This document shows, piece after piece, positions 1,071 to 14,747 of a stretch of DNA of 14,747 bases; positions within the stretch are counted from its first letter, which is position 1; each line of letters starts with the position of its first letter. The position numbers and the translations under genes were made by a program. Source of the DNA: Octopus sinensis (lineage: Eukaryota); contig NW_021825683.1 of NCBI RefSeq assembly GCF_006345805.1, positions 1 to 14,747 of the forward strand, given 5' to 3'. A model generated the notes under the pieces. It worked only from the letters and a program-made list of their open reading frames with translations. It searched no databases and was not told where the DNA came from.

Positions 1071-1081
1071 ATCATAAATAA

Positions 1082-1156
1082 GTTCAGCAAAAATTTAGAT
1101 TCAGATGAATATGGTACTTAAGTTAAAGGCACCGGAATTTGGTATGGTATTATCCA
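1082..1156 (+). repeat. dispersed repeat copy 1 (second copy at 6750-6823)
   Basis: gttcagc[a/g]aaaatttagattcagatgaatatggtacttaagtt is 42/43 identical between the copies; similarity continues to ggtattatcca. Confidence 0.9.
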
Positions 1157-3474: not shown

Positions 3475-3512
3475 CATGCATATATGTATATATAGATACA
3501 TACATCTATATT

Positions 3513-3570
<58 letters not shown>

Positions 3571-3743
3571 GTATATATAAATGCATAGATATAAGTATAT
3601 ACATATACATATATAGATACATACCATATATATATATATATATATATATACACAAAAATATATGTGTGTGTGTATATGTATGTACTTACATGTGTGTATG
3701 TGTACATATTATAATTATGTATGTACATATTTATATATTATGT

Positions 3744-3774
<31 letters not shown>

Positions 3775-3900
3775 ATATATATATATATATATAATATATA
3801 TATATATATATAAATATATATACTTTATATACGTATAAATATATCTAAATATGTAATATATATATAATACTCAACACCCCCCCATATATAAATATATATG
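3475..3900. repeat. (TA)n-rich microsatellite
   Basis: Seen directly. Confidence 0.95.
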
Positions 3901-3989
3901 CTGCTGAGCGGAAGGGAGTGATAAATAGGCGCCTATTAAAATATATAAAGACTTATACAGAAACAGGCGAATGAGCATGAGCGCCACTA

Positions 3990-4145
3990 TCAGTGACTCA
4001 TGAATAAACTTCAATTCTCCACCTACCACCACAGCCCCTTTAGCCCTTCAGGGGTCACGCGGAGGGGTGCTGCTGCCCATCCTTATTTCAGCAGGTCGAG
4101 ATAAGTGAAGTCAAATAACTTGCCCAAGGTTATCAAATAAAGCGC
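3990..4145 (-). mobile_element. old CORE-like SINE remnant
   Basis: Minus strand reads accttgggcaagttatttgacttcac...ctgaaataagg, resembling the CORE/MIR central domain (gaccttgggcaagttacttaac). Confidence 0.45.
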
Positions 4146-4404
4146 CAGTAAGCATCTATTGACTTGGCACTCAATAACAAGCGTGTCCTGAGGGCCAGAC
4201 GTGCAACAACAGGCGTGCGTTGAAGATATTGCGCGGAAGGGCACACGTATACACACCTACGCGTACGCACACACACATACATATATATACACACACATAT
4301 ATGTATAATTGTACACTTACACGCGCATACACACACGCACGCTAGTACATACACTAATGTGCTTATATACAATTATATCATAGATGCCCTCATACAGATT
4401 TAAG

Positions 4405-5036
4405 GGTTAATATAGGGCGTAACAAATATCAGAAAATCAAAAAAAAAATGTGTGTAATAGGTGTAAAACAACTTCCTATGAACGAATATGAAAAAAAAAA
4501 ATTCGCGCACGCGAAAGGGGGGTGGGGGAGAGGCCTCGGAAAATTCACATCGGGAAGTTCCGAAAGCGTCTGAGGAGCTGACTCGGGCACCAAACAAAAA
4601 AAAAATAGTGTAATATGTGTAAAACAACTTGCTCTAAACGAATATGACAAAAAAAATGCGCTCTCGCGAAAGAGGGGTGGGGGAGAGGCCTCGGAATATT
4701 TATATCGGGAATTTCCGAAAGCGTCTGAACCGGGCACAAAAACAAAAAACAAACAGCGTAATAGGTGTAAAACAACTTGCTCTAAACGACTATCATAATG
4801 AAAAAAATGCGCGCTCGCGAAAGGGGGGTGGGGGAGAGGCTTCGGAAATTTCACATCTTCAGTCCACGGCCTTTAAACTAAGAAAAAATAGTGTAATTGG
4901 TGTAAAACTACTTGTTCTAACGAGTATCAAGAACACACACTCACACATGAATCATAAACTCCGTATTTTTGTACATATTTCGCAAAAAAAAATAAAGAGA
5001 AGAAATTCTGGAAAAAGTGAAGAAATGTTGGATCTC
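4405..5036 (+). repeat. left terminal inverted repeat (632 bp) with three full and one partial internal sub-repeats
   Basis: Motif GTAAT[A/T][G/T]GTGTAAAAC[A/T]ACTT starts at 4454, 4610, 4758 and 4893. A GC-rich block cgcgaaag[g/a]ggggtgggggagaggc.tcggaa occurs three times. Confidence 0.97.
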
Positions 5037-5715
5037 CGCCATGTGAATCAAAATACGTGTCAGAAACATCTTGAAATACTACAGAAATTATGTTACGAAA
5101 ATGATAATGTATACATACCTCTTTGAGTGGTCCATCGATAATGATTAAAGAAATGAGTTGGATTTGAACTCAGAATATTGACTAACACAACTACATACTA
5201 CAAGACTCAAAATATTCAGCCAAGTCACCACCCTTTAACTAGCAATAATAATAACATCAATAACATAACAGCCAAAAGATTTATTTGTTCTGAAAATAAC
5301 AATCATAGTAAATAAACATGTTCTTTAATATTCACATTCATGTGCACAGTTAAACACACTTACATACAAACAGTCAGGCATGCATAATACAAAACGGAAC
5401 ACATAAATGAAGGATCCATTACTTAGTATATATTACATCTAGAGAATTTTGATTAATAAGTCAAATATGCAAATTATAAAGATAATTAATTGCTTTACTA
5501 AACAGTGTTGTAAAGGTGAAAAAATAAATTTGGGAAAAAAATACACGCCAAAACTAATTAATAAAGGATAATTAGGGAAGATTGACACAAAATAATAATT
5601 TTTTCTGTCTCTTTTTTTCTGATAAATGCATCTTAATAAGTGAGAATTGCATATATCTGAACTATTTCAAAGAAAAGCATAAATTTAATGTTTAAAATAG
5701 CTTTAACCAAGGAAT

Positions 5716-6333
5716 GAGATCCAACATTTCTTCACTTTTTCCAGAATTCTTCTTCTCTTTATTTTTTTTTTTTGCGAAATACGGAGTTTATGATTCATGT
5801 GTGAGTGTGTGTTCTTGATACTCGTTTAGAACAAGTAGTTTTACACCAATTACACTTTTTTTCTTAGTTTAAAGGCCGTGGACTGAAGATGTGAAATTTC
5901 CGAAGCCTCTCCCCCACCCCCCTTTCGCGAGCGCGCATTTTTTTCATGATAGTCGTTTAGAGCAAGTTGTTTTACACCTATTACGCTGTTTTTGTTTTTG
6001 TTTTGTGCCCGGTTCAGACGCTTTCGGAAATTCCCGATATAAATATTCCGAGGCCTCTCCCCCACCCCTCTTTCGCGAGAGCGCATTTTTTTTGTCATAT
6101 TCGTTTAGAGCAAGTTGTTTTACACATATTACACTATTTTTTTTTGTTTGGTGCCGGGTCAGCTCCTCAGACGCTTTCGGAACTTCCCGATGAATTTTCC
6201 GAGGACCTCTCCCCCACCCCCTTTCGCGTGCGCGAATTTTTTTTTTTCATATTCGTTCATAGGAAGTTGTTTTACACCTATTACACACATTTTTTTTTTG
6301 ATTTTCTGATATTTGTTACGCCCTATATTAACC
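5716..6333 (-). repeat. right terminal inverted repeat (618 bp)
   Basis: Base-by-base reverse-complement alignment to the left arm shows 12 difference sites, almost all indels. Confidence 0.97.
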
Positions 6334-6354
6334 GATTTAAGCACCTCTGGGTTG

Positions 6355-6423
6355 AATGTATGTAGTATGTATGTGTAATATGCATGTCTATATCTATCTA
6401 TATATAATTTGTATACATATGTA

Positions 6424-6485
<62 letters not shown>

Positions 6486-6538
6486 TATATATATATATGT
6501 ATAGAATAAAAATAAAAATATACATACATACTATACAG

Positions 6539-6577
<39 letters not shown>

Positions 6578-6740
6578 TATATAATTGTATATATATGTAC
6601 ATACATACATCCTTATTATAGTATATATATACATATATATGTATATATATATATATATATATTATAATATGCATGGATATATAATATATATATATATATA
6701 TATCTATATATATGCATGTCTGTCTATATATTTTGTATAT
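6355..6740. repeat. (TA)n/(TATG)n microsatellite
   Basis: Seen directly. Confidence 0.95.
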
Positions 6741-6749
6741 AGTAGATTA

Positions 6750-6823
6750 GTTCAGCGAAAATTTAGATTCAGATGAATATGGTACTTAAGTTGAGGCACA
6801 AGAATTTTGTAGGGTATTATCCA
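6750..6823 (+). repeat. dispersed repeat copy 2 (first copy at 1082-1156)
   Basis: Direct-orientation match to 1082-1156. Confidence 0.9.
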
Positions 6824-7145
6824 TACAATTTTAAAGTAAGGTCATTAAAATTAAAATAAGCAACAAGAATATTCAGAGGTAATGCAGTACGATCGTTTCA
6901 TGCAACTCCATTTAATTTAACAATGCAATTATTACATCAATTTAAATGCAGAGCAATCTTCAGCTGCACAAAGACACAGAATTTAATTAAATTAAAACAG
7001 ATGTACACATTAGTATAATTGTACCTAAAATCTCCAAGAAGTTAAGGATATATATATATATAACCGTAAGAAACTAAGGGAAGCATTTTTGTCTAGAGCA
7101 ATAATGATTTAGCAGTTCATCGCCTTCAGTCAGTAACACTTAATA

Positions 7146-7298
7146 TTGGTTTCAAATTTTCGCACAAGGCCAGCAAGTTCGCAAAATGATGAAAAACAGA
7201 GCCGACCTCAACGGAATTTGAACTCTGAACATAAAGACAAAGGAGATGTCGCTAAGCGTTTTGTCCACCGTGCTAACGATTCTACCAGTTCGCCACCT
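7146..7298 (-). mobile_element. SINE family B copy with internal deletion
   Basis: ggtttcaaatttt.gcacaaggcc...gccgacctcaacggaatttgaactc...gtgctaacgattctaccag.tcgcc. It lacks the gtcgataaa..gtaccag segment present in the other copies. Confidence 0.8.
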
Positions 7299-7439
7299 TA
7301 TATATTCTTTACTGTTTTATTTATTTTTTGTGGCAATGTATTAGTCTTATGTAGTTACTACCAGACCGGTTTCTACTTTTACTTATACTCCTTAGAGTTT
7401 ACATCTTCTCTATCGCATTGCGTGAGAAATTGGCCATGG

Positions 7440-7835
7440 AGTGGTTTCTCTGATTATCCTTATTAGCTTCTCTTTGTTTCCAGGTATTTTATTCCACTAT
7501 TGTTATTTTGTAATAGTTTACATTTTCGATCAGACCCTAGTCCCCATCTGTATGGGACAGATACACACTGTGTTTATATCAGCTAAGGGACGCAATCAGC
7601 AGTTTCCAGGTCTTTCTGTCTAAGCTCTTCAATTCGCTGATCTTCCAGTCCATTATTTCAAAAGCTGTAATTCATAACAGCTATGGCCACCATATTGATG
7701 CCAATTATTTCATTTCTAGCATCGAGTTCTTTTTACTTCTTTTGAAATATTAGAACGATTCTTTTGTGAAATTCTTCTCTAATTTTCTCCTTCATTTCTG
7801 TTTTATATTTTTATCACTTTCGTCTAATCCTGATT
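7440..7835 (-). pseudogene. decayed non-LTR retrotransposon (R4/Dong-like, RLE clade) RT C-terminal/thumb fragment
   Basis: Manual minus-strand translation: TEMKEKIREEFHKRIVLIFQKK*KELDARNEIIGINMVAIAVMNYSF / EIMDWKISELKSLDRKTWKLLI...SVYLSHTDGD*GLIENVNYYKITIVE. This follows the R4-clade pattern (ELNAxNKIxAIN...YSF..IxW...LDRKTRKLL...RLYLPRxEGGRGL). Confidence 0.8.
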
Positions 7836-7857
7836 TCTATTGGTGCTTCTTGTATAA

Positions 7858-8310
<453 letters not shown>

Positions 8311-8615
8311 ACCCATTACCCCTTTATTAAGGTTTATAATTTAATTTCCGTAATTATCTGCCCTCACCGCCACACCCACATCCACCACCACCACCACCAC
8401 CCTACAAACAACTCTTCCTCCTCCTTCTCCTCCACCCCACCCCCTTCTGGCTGGCTGATTGTTGTTCATTTACGTTTTACATGATACGAGGGGCGTGGTT
8501 AAACGATGACGGGTGAGGGAATGATGGGAGTGAGGCTGGTGGTGGTGGTGCGGAAGGGGGTAGTAAGGGGGGGTAGGAATAAAAAAAAGGGGGTTAGAAG
8601 ACGGCCTGGTGGTGT

Positions 8616-8910
8616 GGTAGATTTAGGGCTAGGGGTAGAGAGAGGTGTTGGGTATTGACTGGTGGCAGAGTTGGAAGGATGATGATGTTGGTGGAGGGGG
8701 AAAATTGGGCTGGGTAGGAGAAGGGGGTCACTGGTTGTACGGTAGATTTAGTGGTGATGGTCATGGCAGGGTGTAGAACTGAATGTTGCTGCTAGGGTGA
8801 ATGGTGATAGAGTTGGAAGGAAAGAAGTGTTGGTTGCGGGGACAAACGGTGGGGGTGGGACTGGGAGTTTGGGACTGGTTGTATGGTAGATTTGATAGTG
8901 GTGGTCACGG
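8616..8910 (+). repeat. degenerate G-rich tandem repeat, period ~125-144 bp
   Basis: ggtagattt at 8616, 8741 and 8885; actggttgta[c/t]ggtagattt at 8730 and 8874; agagttggaagga at 8667 and 8809. Confidence 0.65.
8851..8873 (+). other. canonical G-quadruplex motif
   Basis: GGGGG-T-GGG-ACT-GGG-AGTTT-GGG fits G3+N1-7 x4. Confidence 0.6.
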
Positions 8911-9056
8911 TGAGTCAAGTAGTGTGAGGGGAGGTATTGCAAAGGATTTGGTGGTGGTGTGTGTGCATGGGGGTGGTGGTTATGATGTTGTTATTATTGG
9001 CGAAGCAGGCTTTGGTGTTGTTGTTGCTGTTGTTAGTGATGGTGGTGGTGTTTATT

Positions 9057-9120
9057 TCTGATTTCGTGTGATATAAACGCTGGTGGACCTCAAGGTTCTT
9101 GTGATGCTTCTCACTCTGTT
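9057..9120 (+). pseudogene. possible tiny LINE reverse-transcriptase relic (GVPQGS motif)
   Basis: tct gat ttc /tgt gat ata aac gct ggt gga cct caa ggt tct = SDF/CDINAGGPQGS, then a frameshifted V..A..TL. It resembles the LINE RT motif 'I(N/T)xGVPQGSVLxPTLF'. Very short. Confidence 0.4.
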
Positions 9121-9237
9121 GAGGGTCCTAAATACGGCACAGCTAACTTTTGTTTGTCATCGTTCCTGGGCCGATAGTTACATGAACCGAACGCGTAGAT
9201 AAGTTGATATATTCGACAGTATCGTGGACTGTGCAAA

Positions 9238-9495
9238 CCCCCTCCTCTCCCTCCTCCTCCTCCTCCTCCTCTTCTTTCTTCTATTCCCCCTCCCTCCTTC
9301 TCCTCCTCCTCCTCCTCCTTCTCCTCCTCTCCTCCTCCTGCTTCTCCTCATTGACATAATAATAATGACGATAGTGATGATGCTAGTGGTGGTAGTGGTG
9401 ATGATGATGATCAGGATGATGAAGATGATGGTGGTGGTGGTAGTGGTGTTGGTGGTGATAATGATGCTGACGACGATAGAATACAACAATGATTG
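9238..9495. repeat. compound trinucleotide array (CCT then GAT/GGT)
   Basis: Seen directly. Confidence 0.93.
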
Positions 9496-9777
9496 AACAA
9501 CCACTGAGGTCGCTACTGATAGAGCGGCCAATTCTGTGTTAGCATTCAGTTGTTAGCAGATTCTTGCTACTGACGAAGCGCAATGAGGCAGAAATGCACT
9601 GTTTCCAATTCAACCACCGCTACTGCTCTATGATTTTTGTCTGCTCCTGATATATATACGTTTCTAACAGATACTTTCTCGAGATGAATGAAACAGTTAT
9701 TTAGACTTTCATAATGTCATCTACTTTAAGTATAACACACAGATTGTTATTTTAAACTAACACCGCTTTTGACGCAT

Positions 9778-9997
9778 ATTCTTTTATTCTTTTATTCTTT
9801 TACTTGTTTCAGTCATTTGACTGCGGCCATGCTGGAACATCGCCGGTAATCGAACAAATCGACCCCAGAACATATTCTTTGTAAGCCTGGTACTTATTCT
9901 ATCGGTCTCTTTTGCCGAACTGGTGCGTTACACACCAACATCGGTTGTCAAGCGACAGTGGGAGGGACAACACAACACAAGCACACAAATACATACA

Positions 9998-10057
<60 letters not shown>

Positions 10058-10234
10058 TACACATATATATACATATATATGCAACAGGCTTCTTTCAGTT
10101 TCCGTCTACCAAATCCACTCACAAGGCTTTGGTCGGCCCAAGGCCATAGCAGAAGACACTTGCCCAAGGTGCCACGCAGTAGGACTGAACACGGAACCAT
10201 GTAGTGGGAAGCCAGCTTCTTACCACTCAGCCAC
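9778..10234 (-). mobile_element. full-length tRNA-derived CORE-like SINE (family A) with internal (TATG)n/(TA)n tract and 8-mer tail
   Basis: Minus strand: head gtggctgagtggtaagaag (A-box-like) and ggttccgtgttcagtcc (B-box-like), then ggcaccttgggcaagtgtc (CORE-like), an internal microsatellite at ~9985-10080, a 3' body, and tail (AAAAGAAT)x3 at 9778-9801. Confidence 0.88.
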
Positions 10235-10336
10235 ATACATAAGTTAAATAATATTTACTGTATGTATGCCATATTTTCTAATATAACCCATGGCATCAAA
10301 TAAGTAGTAATTCAATGATCAGCTACATCTCTTCAA

Positions 10337-10383
10337 GGTGGTACTACAGCATGGCCGCAGTCCAGTTGCTGTAACCGGTAAAA
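10337..10383 (+). mobile_element. 3' terminal fragment of SINE family A
   Basis: ggtggtactacagcatggccgcagtc..ttgctgtaaccggtaaaa matches the reverse complement of 9799-9845 and of 59-105. Confidence 0.7.
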
Positions 10384-10403
10384 ACCGGTTATAAGTGATA
10401 GTC

Positions 10404-10406
<3 letters not shown>

Positions 10407-10449
<43 letters not shown>

Positions 10450-10451
10450 TG
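10407..10451. repeat. (TG)n microsatellite
   Basis: Seen directly. Confidence 0.97.
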
Positions 10452-10669
10452 TTCCACCGCTGCCATGTGACATCTTTTTACTGGCAGTGATCCAGGATGG
10501 CCACAGCTGAAACACGTAGTAGATTAAAAGACAATATATGCACACACCGACGCGCATTAAAAAGAAATTCATGAACCTTAGGTCTTGTAAGGTGGATTAC
10601 ACGGTTTGCCTTGAATGGGATGCCAGGCTGTAGAGATCAAGGTCGGACATTTTGACAGACGAGATAAGT

Positions 10670-10833
10670 TCAATACATCGACCCCAGTAGCTGACTGGTA
10701 CTTCATTTTATCAACCTGAAGGGATGAAAGTAAAGTTGATCTCGTTGGGATTTGAACTTACAACGCAAAAAGCCAGAAGTATTACTAAACAAGCATTTTC
10801 TCCGACGTGCTAACGATTCTGCCAGATCGCCCC
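10670..10833 (-). mobile_element. SINE family B copy
   Basis: catcgaccccagtag.tgactggtactt.attttatc...gggatgaaag...gatttgaact...gtgctaacgattctgccag.tcgcc is the reverse complement of the 1936-2135 type. Confidence 0.85.
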
Positions 10834-10969
10834 TTATACATACATACATACATACATACATGCAAAAATACCCTGTTGTTGATGTTGAAATTTCAATGAA
10901 GGAGCCTTGGATCTAGGTTAGAAACCGGTTCTTTCTCTATTGGTGAAACCCTGAAATAAAACTAAATAA

Positions 10970-11128
10970 TGACATACATACATACCACATACACATATAT
11001 ACGTACATACACATACATACAAAGTGTATATATATACATATACATATGCATATATATATACATATATATATATATATATTTAAATATATATACATATATA
11101 TATACATACCTACATATATATATATACA

Positions 11129-11180
<52 letters not shown>

Positions 11181-11240
11181 ATATATATATATGCACACAC
11201 ATACACATGCACACACAAACACACGTATGTATATATGTAT
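10970..11240. repeat. (TACA)n/(TA)n microsatellite
   Basis: Seen directly. Confidence 0.95.
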
Positions 11241-12327
11241 AAGAATGTAAGCCTGATTGTCACATCACCCGATTCAACAGGTAGATTTTAAGAAATGAAT
11301 CAAATTTTTCGCTTTTCAACATAATCATTGTATTGTGTGTGTCTTTACGCAACAATGGAGCAAACAGGAATTAGATGCTCGACTCATTGTATAAGAAAAC
11401 AGCGGCAAGTTTCGTATTAATTCACCATTGATGTCCTCCTTTAACTTCATTTTCTTCTTCTTCTTCTTCCTTATTCCCCCCGTAATTTCAGACAACATTT
11501 TTGTAGCTGTTTAACTGACCTCCACATCACTGTACACCACTGTTTTTGTCTCTTTGTTGCGCATGGATTGCCCCAAGGGGTTATTTTCATTGGAATGTTT
11601 AACCAACTCTTTCCCCTTAGTTCGCTTTCTTTCTCACCCCTTACTTTGTCTTATTCATTTGTATATATTTAAAGGTGCGTATGTATTCATTCATTACCAA
11701 TAATATAAGTTTGGTTGTGTTCTGTCAAGGCCAATCCTATCGCCGAAAGCCATTGAATGCAAATCTTTTTGTTTGTTTGCTCTGCAATCAAATCTCAGAG
11801 GAAGCTTGGAGCTGCCTGACATTTGCTTTTATTTCATTTCATTTTTTTATCATTATTTAACAATGGACTCTACTCTTGGCCCCCTCTCTCACGCCCCACC
11901 ACACGCCATTTCCTATTGGATTACAGTAGCTCGGGGCTGTCTCAGTCTATTTTATTAATCAAATATTTGCAAGACATCGCTTAGTTCTATATGTCGAAGC
12001 TGTATTATTTCACGTGTGACGTAACACAAAATGTCTACCGCAACTACATCAGAAGCCGTCAATTTATCTAACCTCGCTGAACTGTGTTACAAGCTATCGC
12101 TCTGGTTAATTTTACTAAACTACAATGTAACAATACAAGTTCATAACCACACCTATTAAGGCTCGTTCGAAAATTAGACCCAGGTGGGCCGTTGCAGCGG
12201 CTTCGCTTGTGAATTGAACCAACTCGGTTTTAATGTTAAGACACGCTTACTTCCCTTTCCAAACTGACGATGATAGAAGTTCAAAGCTGCTCACTAAAGA
12301 GTAAAGATATATTTCAGTGTTAACTGG

Positions 12328-12336
12328 CACACACAA

Positions 12337-12369
<33 letters not shown>

Positions 12370-12642
12370 CCCAAACGCATACACTAAACACACACACAAA
12401 CACAAACACACACTCATACACACACACACACACACAAACACACATACAAACACAGACACAGACACACAAACACACACAAACATAAACACATACACACACA
12501 CACACAGAAACACACACACAAACACAAACACACACACACAAAACACACACACAAACACACATACATACACACACACACACACACAAACACACACAAACAC
12601 ACACACACAAACATACACACATACACTAAACACACACAAACG

Positions 12643-12674
<32 letters not shown>

Positions 12675-12676
12675 CA
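12328..12676. repeat. degenerate (CA)n array with CAAA/CATA/CAGA interruptions
   Basis: Seen directly. Confidence 0.95.
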
Positions 12677-13110
12677 ACGGACAGATGCTGATTTATAACG
12701 TAATCTTCACTGTTCTATTGAAATCTCATCGGAGATTGTCTCATCCGTTGAATCTTCGATTTCCAGATAATATTTAGCAATCAATATTTAACGAAGACGA
12801 GAGAAATTTCGAGACGAGTTTCTCCGCATCTATTCAAGTTTCATCTTGTGATCAAATATAACATCTAATGTGGTTAAGATAAGACTTAATCTCTACATGA
12901 TTATCCTAATCTATAACGATCAAGGAGTTTTAAGTTGTCACCGTATTCGTTCGTTATTTGATACTGCTAAATAGAACTCTTATATCTGGCTGAATACGGC
13001 TCCTTGGGTGTTAGAACAACGATGGTATTCTGTTGACAAAACAAGATATTTGAAGAACTTTAATCCGTGGATTATGATTGTAAGAAAGGATTGAATCAGT
13101 ATCGTTCACT

Positions 13111-13378: not shown

Positions 13379-13590
13379 TGGTTTCAAATTTTTGCACAGG
13401 TCCAGCAATTTTGGTGTGGGGCTAGTTGATTATATCGACCCCAATGTTTAACTGGTATTTATTTTGTCGACTCCAAAAGGATGAGAGGCAAAGTCGACCA
13501 TGGTGAAATTTGAAGCCAGAACGTAAAATCGGAAGAAATGCGACTAAACATTTTTTCCTGGCAAAGCAATTATCTGCCGGCTCCTCGCCA
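13379..13590 (-). mobile_element. SINE family B copy
   Basis: tggtttcaaatttttgcaca...atcgacccca...ctggta.ttattttgtcgac.cc.aaaggatga.aggcaaagtcgacc..gg..aaatttgaa.ccagaacgtaaa. Confidence 0.85.
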
Positions 13591-13591
13591 C

Positions 13592-14150
13592 GCACGCGCA
13601 GGCGACAAAGAGCCGGAAAAGATGGCAAAATACAAGCAACTAAGAGACAAAATTGCTCGTAGGGTAATGAAGGGAGTAACTATTATCCCAGCAGTTGTCA
13701 GGGCAGAGGGAGAACTAATAATGAAGTTTGAGTAATATGTCGGAGAAACTTGAACTGACATGAGGGTAGAACAGTGCTTTTCAAACTTTTTGCTGGAGCG
13801 GAACCCCAAGGAAACATTCCACTGGCTCGAAGAACCCCTGTGCAATAATTTAATAGTCTTCTGCACACATATCTGCATAGGAGACTTAAAAATTACTGCC
13901 AATTTTTGCAGTTTTGTAACTTCTTGCGGAACTCCTGGACTGTACTGGCGGAACCCTGGTTGAAAACCACTGGGGTAGAATGTGTCTGAAAAACTGCTCT
14001 ATTGGGAGACAGCAAGGATTTTAAGATTTGTACTCGGGTGGAAAGAAAGCCTCGTGGAATGATACCTAGTGAGAACTTTGACAACAGATTGCTGTTCGTT
14101 CTTATAGAACCGGAGCAAGTAAATTCGAGAGCTCTAAAAAGTAAAATGAA
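13592..14150 (+). pseudogene. 3' end of an R4/Dong-like (RLE) non-LTR retrotransposon: C-terminal endonuclease region plus presumed 3' UTR, interrupted by a hAT MITE
   Basis: ARAGDKEPEKMAKYKQLRDKIARRVMKGVTIIPAVVRAEGELIMKFE*YVGET*TDMRVE [MITE] CV*KTALLG/TARILRFVLG matches the RLE C-terminal pattern KExEKxxKYxxL...V.IIPxVxGAxG...QKTALLGTARILRxVL. Confidence 0.88.
13772..13972. mobile_element. hAT (Charlie-like) MITE, 201 bp
   Basis: TIRs are CAGTGCTTTTCAAAC and GTTGAAAACCACTG. Perfect 8-bp TSD GGGTAGAA at 13764-13771 and 13973-13980, with TAGA at positions 4-7 as in the Charlie NTCTAGAN preference. Subterminal GCGGAAC[C/T]C motifs are repeated. Confidence 0.92.
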
Positions 14151-14214: not shown

Positions 14215-14747
14215 GTGATTGTGAGAGCAGTGCATGCCATCAAAGTGTCACTGGGTATAAATATACGAAGCCCATTATACCCAACATGACTACCCATCTG
14301 ATATGGGTAAACCAGGCACATGCATCACAACCATATGTGCACGACATGGTGACCTTATATCAAGATAAACAGCGCATGACCTCGCAGGTGGAGCCCAGTT
14401 TGAATTTTCTTCATCGTGCTCAAAAGGTCCCTGAATAAGGGTTCTTTAAGGATGTTGAGCGAAACATCCATGTTTCCAAAGGTGAATTATTCAAACCTCA
14501 AAGAATCCCTCTCAACTCATGGCTATGATGCTCCCCCACTACTTCTACTCGTGACCAGAGATGCACATATCGTCAGCCACAAAGGGACATGCTCAACTAG
14601 TTAAGGTCAATCAACTGACAAGCAAATCTGTGGTATTGAGCAGAATATTTGCTGTAACCCATCTTTATACCAAGACAAAACAAATGTACATGATAACACT
14701 TCCAATCAAGTTAAAATCACAAGCCATGAGAGCCACTGTCTGGTACT
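14153..14747 (-). mobile_element. retroposon (SINE or LINE 3' region) with (AAT)n tail, running off the window end
   Basis: Minus strand ends ...gtgtcactttgatggcatgcactgctctcacaatcact-(aat)n. An internal part is duplicated at 1182-1320. Family name not known to me. Confidence 0.7.

What the first reader, a model, noticed from the sequence alone, without database searches (positions are those of the whole stretch)
4397..6341. Young foldback-type transposon: ~620-bp modular TIRs, perfect 8-bp TSD, no transposase
This is the most structured object in the window. The 1,929-bp element is about 65% inverted repeat, with 5'-GG termini and an exact GATTTAAG duplication on both sides. The arms are unusually CpG-rich for this AT-rich background. 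GG termini with an 8-bp TSD and long repeat-containing TIRs fit Merlin (IS1016-like) elements; long modular TIRs also fit MULE/Foldback elements, which more often have 9-bp TSDs. hAT is unlikely because the TIRs are long and lack a (C/T)AG start. I do not recognise the family, so it may be undescribed. An intact TSD and near-identical arms imply recent mobilisation by an autonomous partner elsewhere in the genome.
Basis: partly seen in the sequence, partly recalled or inferred. Interest (0 to 1): 0.8.

Follow-up and report, generated by a model that had tools for sequence, protein, structure and literature searches.

The report
Foldback-type non-autonomous transposon in octopus DNA
This is a real 1.9-kb "foldback" jumping gene without its own enzyme, sitting in octopus DNA between an exact 8-base target duplication; it is a tidy example of a known kind of element, probably moved by a Merlin-type transposase, and is not a new kind of system.

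Summary
Element 4405-6333 (1,929 bp) lies between two exact GATTTAAG copies. Its arms (632 and 616 bp) differ by 2 substitutions and 14 small indels. Each arm has a unique 31-bp GG-starting terminus, about 3.3 tandem units of roughly 150 bp, and a unique inner domain. The arms flank a 681-bp AT-rich, non-coding middle. The arms are not CpG-depleted (o/e 1.3); the middle and flanks are (0.46-0.83).

The host is an octopod. This is a non-autonomous foldback-type cut-and-paste transposon (about 0.9).

The superfamily is unresolved. Merlin is favoured (about 0.5). GG termini and an 8-bp duplication match its published hallmarks. I also found an 8.7-kb octopus Merlin element with GG termini, about 354-bp inverted repeats and 8-bp duplications at three sites. 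Its ends are unrelated to this element, and no autonomous partner was found. A Mutator-like/Foldback origin (about 0.3) fits equally on structure.

The ~150-bp unit also occurs as a six-unit one-directional array in another octopod's sequencing runs. No copy was found in 92 kb of sampled octopus DNA.

"Young" is only partly supported, because arm identity does not date an insertion. Interest is modest.

The parts
4397..4404 (.). Left copy of the 8-bp target-site duplication, GATTTAAG
   Evidence: Exact match to 6334-6341 and directly abutting the terminus.
4405..4435 (+). Left terminal domain: unique sequence starting 5'-GG (GGTTAATATAGGGCGTAACAAATATCAGAAAAT)
   Evidence: The 26-mer occurs only at the two ends, on opposite strands. 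It has no significant similarity to the sub-repeat.
4436..4920 (+). Left tandem sub-repeat array: units 4436-4591, 4592-4739 and 4740-4874, plus a partial fourth unit from 4875
   Evidence: TRF gives period 155 x 2.8. Start-to-start spacings are 156, 148 and 135. The nhmmer unit profile hits at E 1e-35 to 1e-40. Neighbouring units are 67-83% identical.
4921..5036 (+). Left inner domain: unique sequence, mirrored in the right arm
   Evidence: Global arm alignment. Contains the 12-bp indel near 4964.
5037..5717 (.). Middle domain (loop): 681 bp, 27.6% GC, CpG o/e 0.46, non-coding
   Evidence: Composition. No ORF of 70 aa or more and no Pfam hit on the 75-aa stretch. No match in octopus loci.
5718..5784 (-). 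Right inner domain (mirror of the innermost part of the left inner domain, approx. 4961-5036; the rest of that domain's mirror lies in the next row)
   Evidence: Arm alignment.
5785..6302 (-). Right tandem sub-repeat array: mirror of left 4875-4960 (partial fourth unit and the start of the inner domain) at 5785-5870, then mirror units 5871-6003, 6003-6149 and 6150-6302
   Evidence: Mirror units are 96-99% identical to their left partners. TRF gives period 148 x 2.7.
6303..6333 (-). Right terminal domain, ending ...CC-3'
   Evidence: Exact reverse complement of 4405-4430.
6334..6341 (.). Right copy of the 8-bp target-site duplication, GATTTAAG

Best explanation
This is a non-autonomous, foldback-type class II (TIR, cut-and-paste) transposon in an octopod genome.

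Inferred mechanism:
- A DDE transposase encoded elsewhere binds the two identical GG-starting termini, and probably repeated sites in the ~150-bp sub-repeats.
- It excises the 1,929-bp unit and inserts it at a staggered 8-bp cut.
- Repair of that cut produced the two GATTTAAG copies.

The most likely mobilising enzyme is a Merlin-type (IS1595-like, DDE_Tnp_IS1595) transposase.

Shown here: the anatomy, the TSD, the absence of coding capacity, and the octopod host.

Inferred only: the superfamily, trans-mobilisation, and a binding-site role for the sub-repeats.

I put about 0.9 on 'foldback-type non-autonomous TIR transposon'. The confidence field below applies to the full statement including Merlin.
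For: Structure:
- Exact 8-bp TSD and GG...CC termini.
- Arms of 616-632 bp with 2 substitutions.
- Domain plan of terminal domain, tandem units, inner domain and non-coding middle. This is the same plan as published foldback elements such as Tetris (PMC4079207).
- No transposase.

Merlin hallmarks from the literature:
- Conserved terminal 5'-GG and 8- or 9-bp TSDs (PMC8101967).

Host:
- The window shares many interspersed repeats, at 70-92% identity, with O. sinensis, O. vulgaris and O. bimaculoides loci.
- O. bimaculoides is reported as unusually Merlin-rich, with 191 sequences.
- O. vulgaris has recently active Merlin families.

Local precedent:
- An 8.7-kb element carrying a DDE_Tnp_IS1595 gene (L003:4265-12996) has GGCGATG.../GGCATAG... 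ends and about 354-bp TIRs.
- Its 8-bp TSDs at three different sites are GCAAATCT, CAAGGCTT and GAAACTTT.
Against: - Only one copy with termini is known, so TSD length rests on n = 1.
- No autonomous element sharing these termini was found.
- The ends of the octopus Merlin comparator are unrelated to this element beyond GG.
- The arms (616-632 bp) exceed the 24-462 bp TIR range quoted for Merlin.
- MULEs also give 8-bp TSDs and long TIRs with sub-terminal repeats. Most foldback elements are attributed to Mutator.
- O. vulgaris has ten times more recently active Mutator families than Merlin families, 21 against 2.
Confidence: 0.5

Rival explanations
1. The structure is the same, but the element belongs to the Mutator-like (MULE/Foldback) superfamily and is mobilised by a MuDR/FB-type transposase.
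For: - MULEs typically have TIRs over 100 bp and 8-10-bp TSDs.
- Muta1 makes 8- or 9-bp TSDs, carries sub-terminal tandem repeats in its TIRs, and is called a type 2 Foldback element (PMC5225508).
- Most foldback elements are assigned to Mutator. Tetris, with the same domain plan and 8-10-bp TSDs, was tentatively placed there (PMC4079207).
- O. vulgaris has 21 recently active Mutator families against 2 Merlin families.
Against: - The terminal GG is reported as an invariant Merlin hallmark. I could not check MULE termini in octopus.
- An exactly 8-bp TSD is the lower end of the MULE range.
Confidence: 0.3
2. It is a non-autonomous member of another superfamily with 7-8-bp TSDs: hAT, P/Galileo-like, or a rarer one such as Zisupton.
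For: - hAT makes 8-bp TSDs (PMC2874221).
- Galileo (P superfamily) is foldback-like, with very long TIRs, ~140-bp tandem repeats and occasional 8-bp TSDs (PMC4168063).
- hAT has 21 recently active families in O. vulgaris.
Against: - hAT TIRs are 5-27 bp.
- Galileo TSDs are mostly 7 bp with a GTANTAC consensus, which GATTTAAG does not fit.
- From my own knowledge (Yuan and Wessler 2011; the paper was not held), hAT and P termini start YARNG and CANRG, not GG.
Confidence: 0.08
3. It was never mobilised as one transposon. It could be an inverted duplication of a pre-existing ~150-bp satellite array, two independent array-bearing insertions in opposite orientation, or a long-read assembly artefact.
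For: - The unit exists elsewhere as a purely one-directional six-unit array without these termini (L011).
- Arm differences are dominated by indels, 14 against 2 substitutions. That pattern suggests consensus errors in a palindrome that is hard to polish.
- The composition of the middle domain resembles host DNA more than it resembles the arms.
Against: - An exact 8-bp direct repeat abuts both outermost bases of a perfect 26-bp terminal inverted repeat. Neither fold-back read artefacts nor local inverted duplication produce this.
- The left and right flanks are different unique sequences.
- A 681-bp unique spacer and a 12-bp arm indel do not fit a chimeric-read palindrome.
Confidence: 0.07

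Closest known systems
Merlin superfamily (IS1595/IS1016-related DDE transposons), including the 8.7-kb octopus Merlin element at L003:4265-12996
   Same: - Terminal 5'-GG, an 8-bp TSD and long TIRs.
- The host lineage is Merlin-rich.
   Different: - No DDE_Tnp_IS1595 gene or remnant.
- The termini are unrelated to the octopus comparator.
- The arms are longer than the 24-462 bp range quoted.
- The comparator's TIR has no ~150-bp tandem units.
Tetris and other Drosophila Foldback elements (FB), and Muta1-type MULEs
   Same: - The same domain plan: unique terminal domain, variable tandem repeats, inner domain and non-coding middle.
- 8-10-bp TSDs.
- No autonomous copy is known for Tetris.
- Tandem units also occur as independent arrays.
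   Different: - Units are about 150 bp here, against 220 bp in Tetris and 12-15 bp in Muta1.
- There is no sequence similarity.
- The terminal domain here does not resemble the unit, whereas in Tetris it does.
- The host is a mollusc, not an insect.
Galileo (P superfamily foldback-like element)
   Same: Very long TIRs that can contain ~140-bp tandem repeats thought to add transposase-binding sites.
   Different: - Galileo TSDs are 7 bp, rarely 8, with a GTANTAC consensus.
- It encodes a THAP-domain transposase.
- Its termini are not GG (the last point is from memory).

Membership tests
Foldback-type TIR transposon (structural class) | Long inverted arms making up most of the element, built from a terminal domain plus tandem sub-repeats, around a non-coding middle | tested here: met
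   Arms are 64.7% of the element, with about 3.3 units per arm and a 681-bp non-coding middle. The plan matches the description in PMC4079207.
Foldback-type TIR transposon (structural class) | Flanking target-site duplication showing insertion as a unit | tested here: met
   Exact GATTTAAG on both sides.
Foldback-type TIR transposon (structural class) | Multiple dispersed copies with the same termini and different TSDs | tested here: inconclusive
   - No second copy in the window or in 92 kb of octopus DNA.
- Collection scans gave only chance hits.
- A related unit array exists in another octopod but lacks the termini.
- No octopus whole-genome search was available.
Merlin | 8- or 9-bp TSD | tested here: met
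   8 bp. The criterion comes from PMC8101967.
Merlin | TIR begins with 5'-GG | tested here: met
   GGTTAAT... at both ends.
Merlin | TIR length within the reported 24-462 bp | tested here: not met
   Arms are 616-632 bp. This is a descriptive range rather than a strict criterion. The octopus comparator has about 354 bp.
Merlin | A DDE_Tnp_IS1595 transposase in the element, or in an autonomous partner sharing its TIRs | tested here: inconclusive
   - None in the element, as expected if it is non-autonomous.
- Five octopus Merlin loci were examined and none shares the termini.
Mutator-like (MULE/Foldback) | 8-10-bp TSD and TIRs over 100 bp, often with sub-terminal repeats | tested here: met
   8-bp TSD and 616-632-bp repeat-bearing arms. 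The criterion comes from PMC5225508.
Mutator-like (MULE/Foldback) | A MULE transposase in an autonomous partner sharing the TIRs | not testable with these tools
hAT | Short TIRs (5-27 bp) with an 8-bp TSD | tested here: not met
   The TSD length fits, but the TIRs are over 600 bp.
P/Galileo | 7-bp (rarely 8-bp) TSD with a GTANTAC-like consensus | tested here: not met
   GATTTAAG is 8 bp and does not fit the consensus.
piggyBac/Kolobok (TTAA target) | TTAA TSD directly abutting matching termini | tested here: not met
   TTAA lies inside GATTTAAG. Taking it as the TSD leaves mismatched tips (G+GGTTAAT against ATC+GGTTAAT).
Helitron-derived tandem-repeat MITEs of molluscs | No TIRs and no TSD | tested here: not met
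   This element has both. The family description is from my own knowledge.

The most novel reading that the evidence does not exclude
This is the first characterised foldback derivative of the Merlin superfamily, with TIRs longer than any reported for Merlin. Its CpG-retaining ~150-bp unit is conserved across octopod species and spins off free-standing satellite-like arrays. That would make it a mollusc counterpart of the Tetris transposon-to-satellite route. Alternatively, its partner transposase belongs to no described superfamily.
Probability: 0.2. Interest if true: 0.5.

Novelty: new member of a known kind. Interest (0 to 1): 0.3.

Why it matters
Foldback elements are hotspots for hairpin formation, deletion, ectopic recombination and inversion, and they can seed satellite DNA.

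A cleanly bounded octopus example offers three things:
- a handle for finding its autonomous partner in a genome where TIR elements are reported as recently active;
- a possible case of a Merlin-driven foldback, when most foldbacks are attributed to Mutator or P;
- a unit shared between octopod species that could be traced from transposon arm to tandem array.

It does not open a new biological question on its own.

Tried and rejected
**Searches for other copies**
- Protein-database search with the minus-strand arm ORF found nothing.
- Exact look-ups of three arm ORFs found nothing on record.
- DNA pattern scans gave: metagenomes, 0 hits and then 1 chance hit; prokaryotic genomes, 1 chance hit; viral contigs, 0 hits.
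- Searching printed sequence strings in papers returned only unrelated SARS-CoV-2 primer matches or nothing.
- BLAST, short-word BLAST and an nhmmer unit profile against 92 kb of octopus DNA and 44 kb of ENA loci found no copy.

**Host identification**
- A protein search with a degraded LINE-tail fragment found no candidates.
- The host was instead identified through shared repeats.

**Similarities rejected as chance**
- CGAAAGAGGGTGGG in the octopus Merlin locus against the sub-repeat: score 23, against a null of 20 +/- 2.5.
- Terminal domain against the sub-repeat.
- Terminal and inner domains against the L011 flanks.

**Other negatives**
- ENA Merlin loci L008-L010 are not octopus.
- Rfam and tRNA scans were empty.
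- Yuan and Wessler 2011 is not held.

Full report
**1. Observation**

The structure is in the sequence exactly as described. GATTTAAG occurs at 4397-4404 and again at 6334-6341, directly abutting the two ends of a 1,929-bp segment.

The first 26 bases, GGTTAATATAGGGCGTAACAAATATC, recur as an exact reverse complement at the other end and nowhere else in the window. None were expected in 200 shuffles.

A global alignment of 4405-5036 with the reverse complement of 5718-6333 gives 606 matches, 2 substitutions and 14 indel events (32 columns). That is 99.7% identity ignoring gaps and 94.7% counting them.

Each arm has three parts:
- a unique 31-bp terminal domain;
- about 3.3 tandem units of 135-156 bp (TRF period 155 x 2.8 and 148 x 2.7; spacings);
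- a unique inner domain.

Mirror-image units in the two arms are 96-99% identical, whereas neighbouring units within an arm are only 67-83% identical. The tandem array is therefore much older than the event that made, or last homogenised, the two arms.

The 681-bp middle (5037-5717) is 27.6% GC.

As single-stranded DNA the whole element folds into a 606-bp stem at -791 kcal/mol. Shuffles give -165 to -194 kcal/mol.

**2. Composition and coding**

CpG observed/expected is 1.31 and 1.32 in the arms, 0.46 in the middle and 0.65-0.83 in the flanks. There are 31 CpG in each arm and 6 in the middle.

Among the three full units, 6 of 12 CpG sites are kept in all three. That is about what the overall column conservation predicts (0.705 squared). 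The units have therefore diverged by roughly 20% without any special loss of CpG.

No element ORF has a Pfam match above chance. tblastn with 120 Merlin-type proteins finds no remnant in the window. The Rfam and tRNA scans were empty. The element is non-coding.

**3. Host**

The window is extremely rich in simple repeats and carries SINE-like copies.

After fetching Merlin loci from three octopus assemblies, BLAST showed that the window shares many interspersed repeats with them at 70-92% identity. Examples are 9784-10234 against L006 at 81% over 465 bp, and 13812-13938 against L003 at 92%. It shares none with three ENA metagenome loci.

The host is therefore an octopod. The species is not determined.

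**4. What it is**

An exact 8-bp direct repeat flanking perfect terminal inverted repeats is the signature of insertion by a cut-and-paste DDE transposase that makes an 8-bp staggered cut. With no transposase of its own, the element must be mobilised in trans.

Its domain plan is that of published foldback elements. Tetris of Drosophila virilis has a terminal domain, a variable number of ~220-bp tandem repeats, an inner domain and a non-coding middle. It has 8-10-bp TSDs and no known autonomous copy (PMC4079207).

The tandem repeats in Galileo's long TIRs carry extra transposase-binding sites. By analogy, the conserved blocks of the unit here are candidate binding sites. These blocks are GTAATAGGTGTAAAAC.ACTTGCT and TTCGCGCTCGCGAA...GTGGGGGAGA..C.TCGGAA. 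This is inference only.

**5. Superfamily**

*Case for Merlin.* Published hallmarks are a conserved terminal 5'-GG, 8- or 9-bp TSDs, TIRs of 24-462 bp and a DDE_Tnp_IS1595 transposase. Octopus bimaculoides is singled out as unusually rich, with 191 sequences (PMC8101967).

I used one of that paper's octopus proteins as a seed and recovered octopus homologues and their loci.
- One element, L003:4265-12996, is 8.7 kb and carries a 305-aa DDE_Tnp_IS1595 gene.
- It is 99.6% identical to a copy on another O. sinensis chromosome and about 98-99% identical to an O. vulgaris copy.
- It has GGCGATG.../GGCATAG... ends and about 354-bp TIRs.
- Its 8-bp TSDs at three different sites are GCAAATCT, CAAGGCTT and GAAACTTT.

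Octopus Merlins therefore do produce the signature seen here.

*Case against.*
- That element's ends are unrelated to this one, and its TIRs lack ~150-bp units.
- The arms here exceed the quoted Merlin range.
- Animal MULEs also give 8- or 9-bp TSDs with long, repeat-bearing TIRs (PMC5225508).
- Most foldbacks are attributed to Mutator.
- O. vulgaris has 21 recently active Mutator families against 2 Merlin families, plus 49 unclassified TIR families (PMC13282606).

*Other candidates.* hAT is unlikely because its TIRs are 5-27 bp. Galileo-type P elements are unlikely because their TSDs are 7 bp with a GTANTAC consensus. A TTAA reading of the target leaves mismatched tips.

My probabilities are Merlin about 0.5, MULE about 0.3, other superfamilies about 0.08, and not a unitary transposon about 0.07.

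**6. Relatives elsewhere**

No second copy was found by any of these routes:
- the window itself;
- 92 kb of octopus DNA, by BLAST, short-word BLAST and an nhmmer unit profile;
- the metagenome, prokaryotic-genome and viral collections, which gave only chance hits;
- printed sequence strings in papers.

A full HMMER search of 1.84 billion representative proteins with the plus-strand arm ORF gave one hit, P0121 (E 4.7e-6). It is encoded on three short Logan contigs from SRR11869394, SRR11869391 and SRR11869385.

L011:195-1111 is a one-directional array of six units of 139-175 bp. These units are homologous to the window's unit over their whole length, at about 67-76% identity. L011:1-153 matches a common octopus repeat at 78-82%, so that sample is also an octopod or a close relative.

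The contig shows no GGTTAAT... terminus, no inverted partner and no inner-domain match. The unit family is therefore shared between octopod species and occurs in arrays of different length. Whether L011 is a foldback arm truncated by short-read assembly, a satellite seeded by the element, or the satellite from which the arms were built cannot be decided here.

**7. Age**

TIRs are not regenerated at each transposition. The 0.33% substitution difference between the arms therefore dates the formation or last homogenisation of the palindrome, not the insertion.

The octopus literature calibrates a Jukes-Cantor distance of 0.09 to about 25 My. On that scale the arm difference corresponds to roughly half a million years. 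This is my arithmetic and is rough.

An intact 2 x 8-bp TSD would survive several percent divergence, so it constrains the age only weakly. The lack of CpG depletion in the arms is consistent with recency, but also with an unmethylated state or with constraint.

The indel-to-substitution ratio (14:2) is odd. About 8 of the 14 indels lie in homopolymers or short repeats. This could reflect slippage or residual consensus errors in a palindrome. Reads are needed to tell.

**8. Artefact check**

Fold-back chimeric reads or a local inverted duplication would not place an exact 8-bp direct repeat outside a perfect terminal inverted repeat. They would not leave a 681-bp unique spacer, different unique flanks, or a 12-bp indel between the arms. 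I consider an artefact unlikely.

**9. Verdict**

This is a real, well-bounded foldback-type non-autonomous DNA transposon in an octopod. Merlin is the leading candidate for the mobilising superfamily and MULE is the serious rival. It is a new, or at least here uncatalogued, member of a known kind. Interest is modest at 0.3.

The decisive work is a genome-wide census of copies, their TSD lengths, and any longer copy carrying a transposase. None of these could be run with the collections available.

Noticed in passing
L003:4265-12996 (O. sinensis CM016860.1), L005:4252-12997 (CM016861.1), L004:~3880-12953 (O. vulgaris OX597829.1): An 8.7-kb Merlin element with a 305-aa DDE_Tnp_IS1595 gene, about 354-bp TIRs, GG ends and 8-bp TSDs. 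It is 99.6% identical between two O. sinensis chromosomes and about 98-99% identical to an O. vulgaris copy, each at a site with a different TSD. It looks recently active. It also contains an internal 344-bp inverted-repeat pair (4638-4981 / 9412-9755, 98.8%) that may be a nested element.
   Followed up: partly
L011:195-1111 (Logan SRR11869394; the same contig occurs in SRR11869391 and SRR11869385): A one-directional array of six 139-175-bp units homologous to the window's sub-repeat, flanked by an octopus interspersed repeat on the left and, by eye only, SINE-like sequence on the right. The organism and library type of these runs are unknown to me.
   Followed up: partly
window 10640-10835 (-), 13410-13560 (-), 7184-7305: Copies or fragments of a SINE-like repeat (for example ...gttcaaatcccaacgag...ctttcatcccttcaggttgataaaatgaagtaccag...). 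They match repeats in O. sinensis and O. bimaculoides loci at 72-80%.
   Followed up: partly
window 9776-10234: A roughly 460-bp interspersed repeat with an internal (ATAC)n tract. It occurs many times in the octopus loci, up to 89% identical over 180 bp in L006, and at L011:1-153.
   Followed up: no
window 3480-3866, 6389-6713, 12328-12676, 8014-8154 and elsewhere: Extreme simple-repeat load: (AT)~195, (TA)~164 starting 48 bp to the right of the element, (CA)~174, (TTA)47, and several trinucleotide tracts. The element sits in a microsatellite-rich stretch.
   Followed up: no
window 1075-1156 vs 6743-6823; 1181-1321 vs 14341-14467 (inverted): Two further low-copy dispersed repeats within the window, at 89% and 75% identity. 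In the first pair, each copy lies downstream of a (TA)n tract (~200 bp and ~30 bp away).
   Followed up: no
window 13514-14050 (+): Frameshifted pieces resembling the C-terminal tail of a retrotransposon ORF (KYKQLRDKIARR...VTIIPAVV...LLYWETARILRFVL). They partly overlap a SINE-like copy on the other strand. The protein search found no candidates.
   Followed up: partly
L008:5936-9196 (ENA ERZ26222911, not octopus): Three identical-length 104-aa DDE_Tnp_IS1595 ORFs spaced 1,473 bp apart next to a 268-aa one. This is a tandemly repeated Merlin fragment in an unidentified eukaryotic contig.
   Followed up: no
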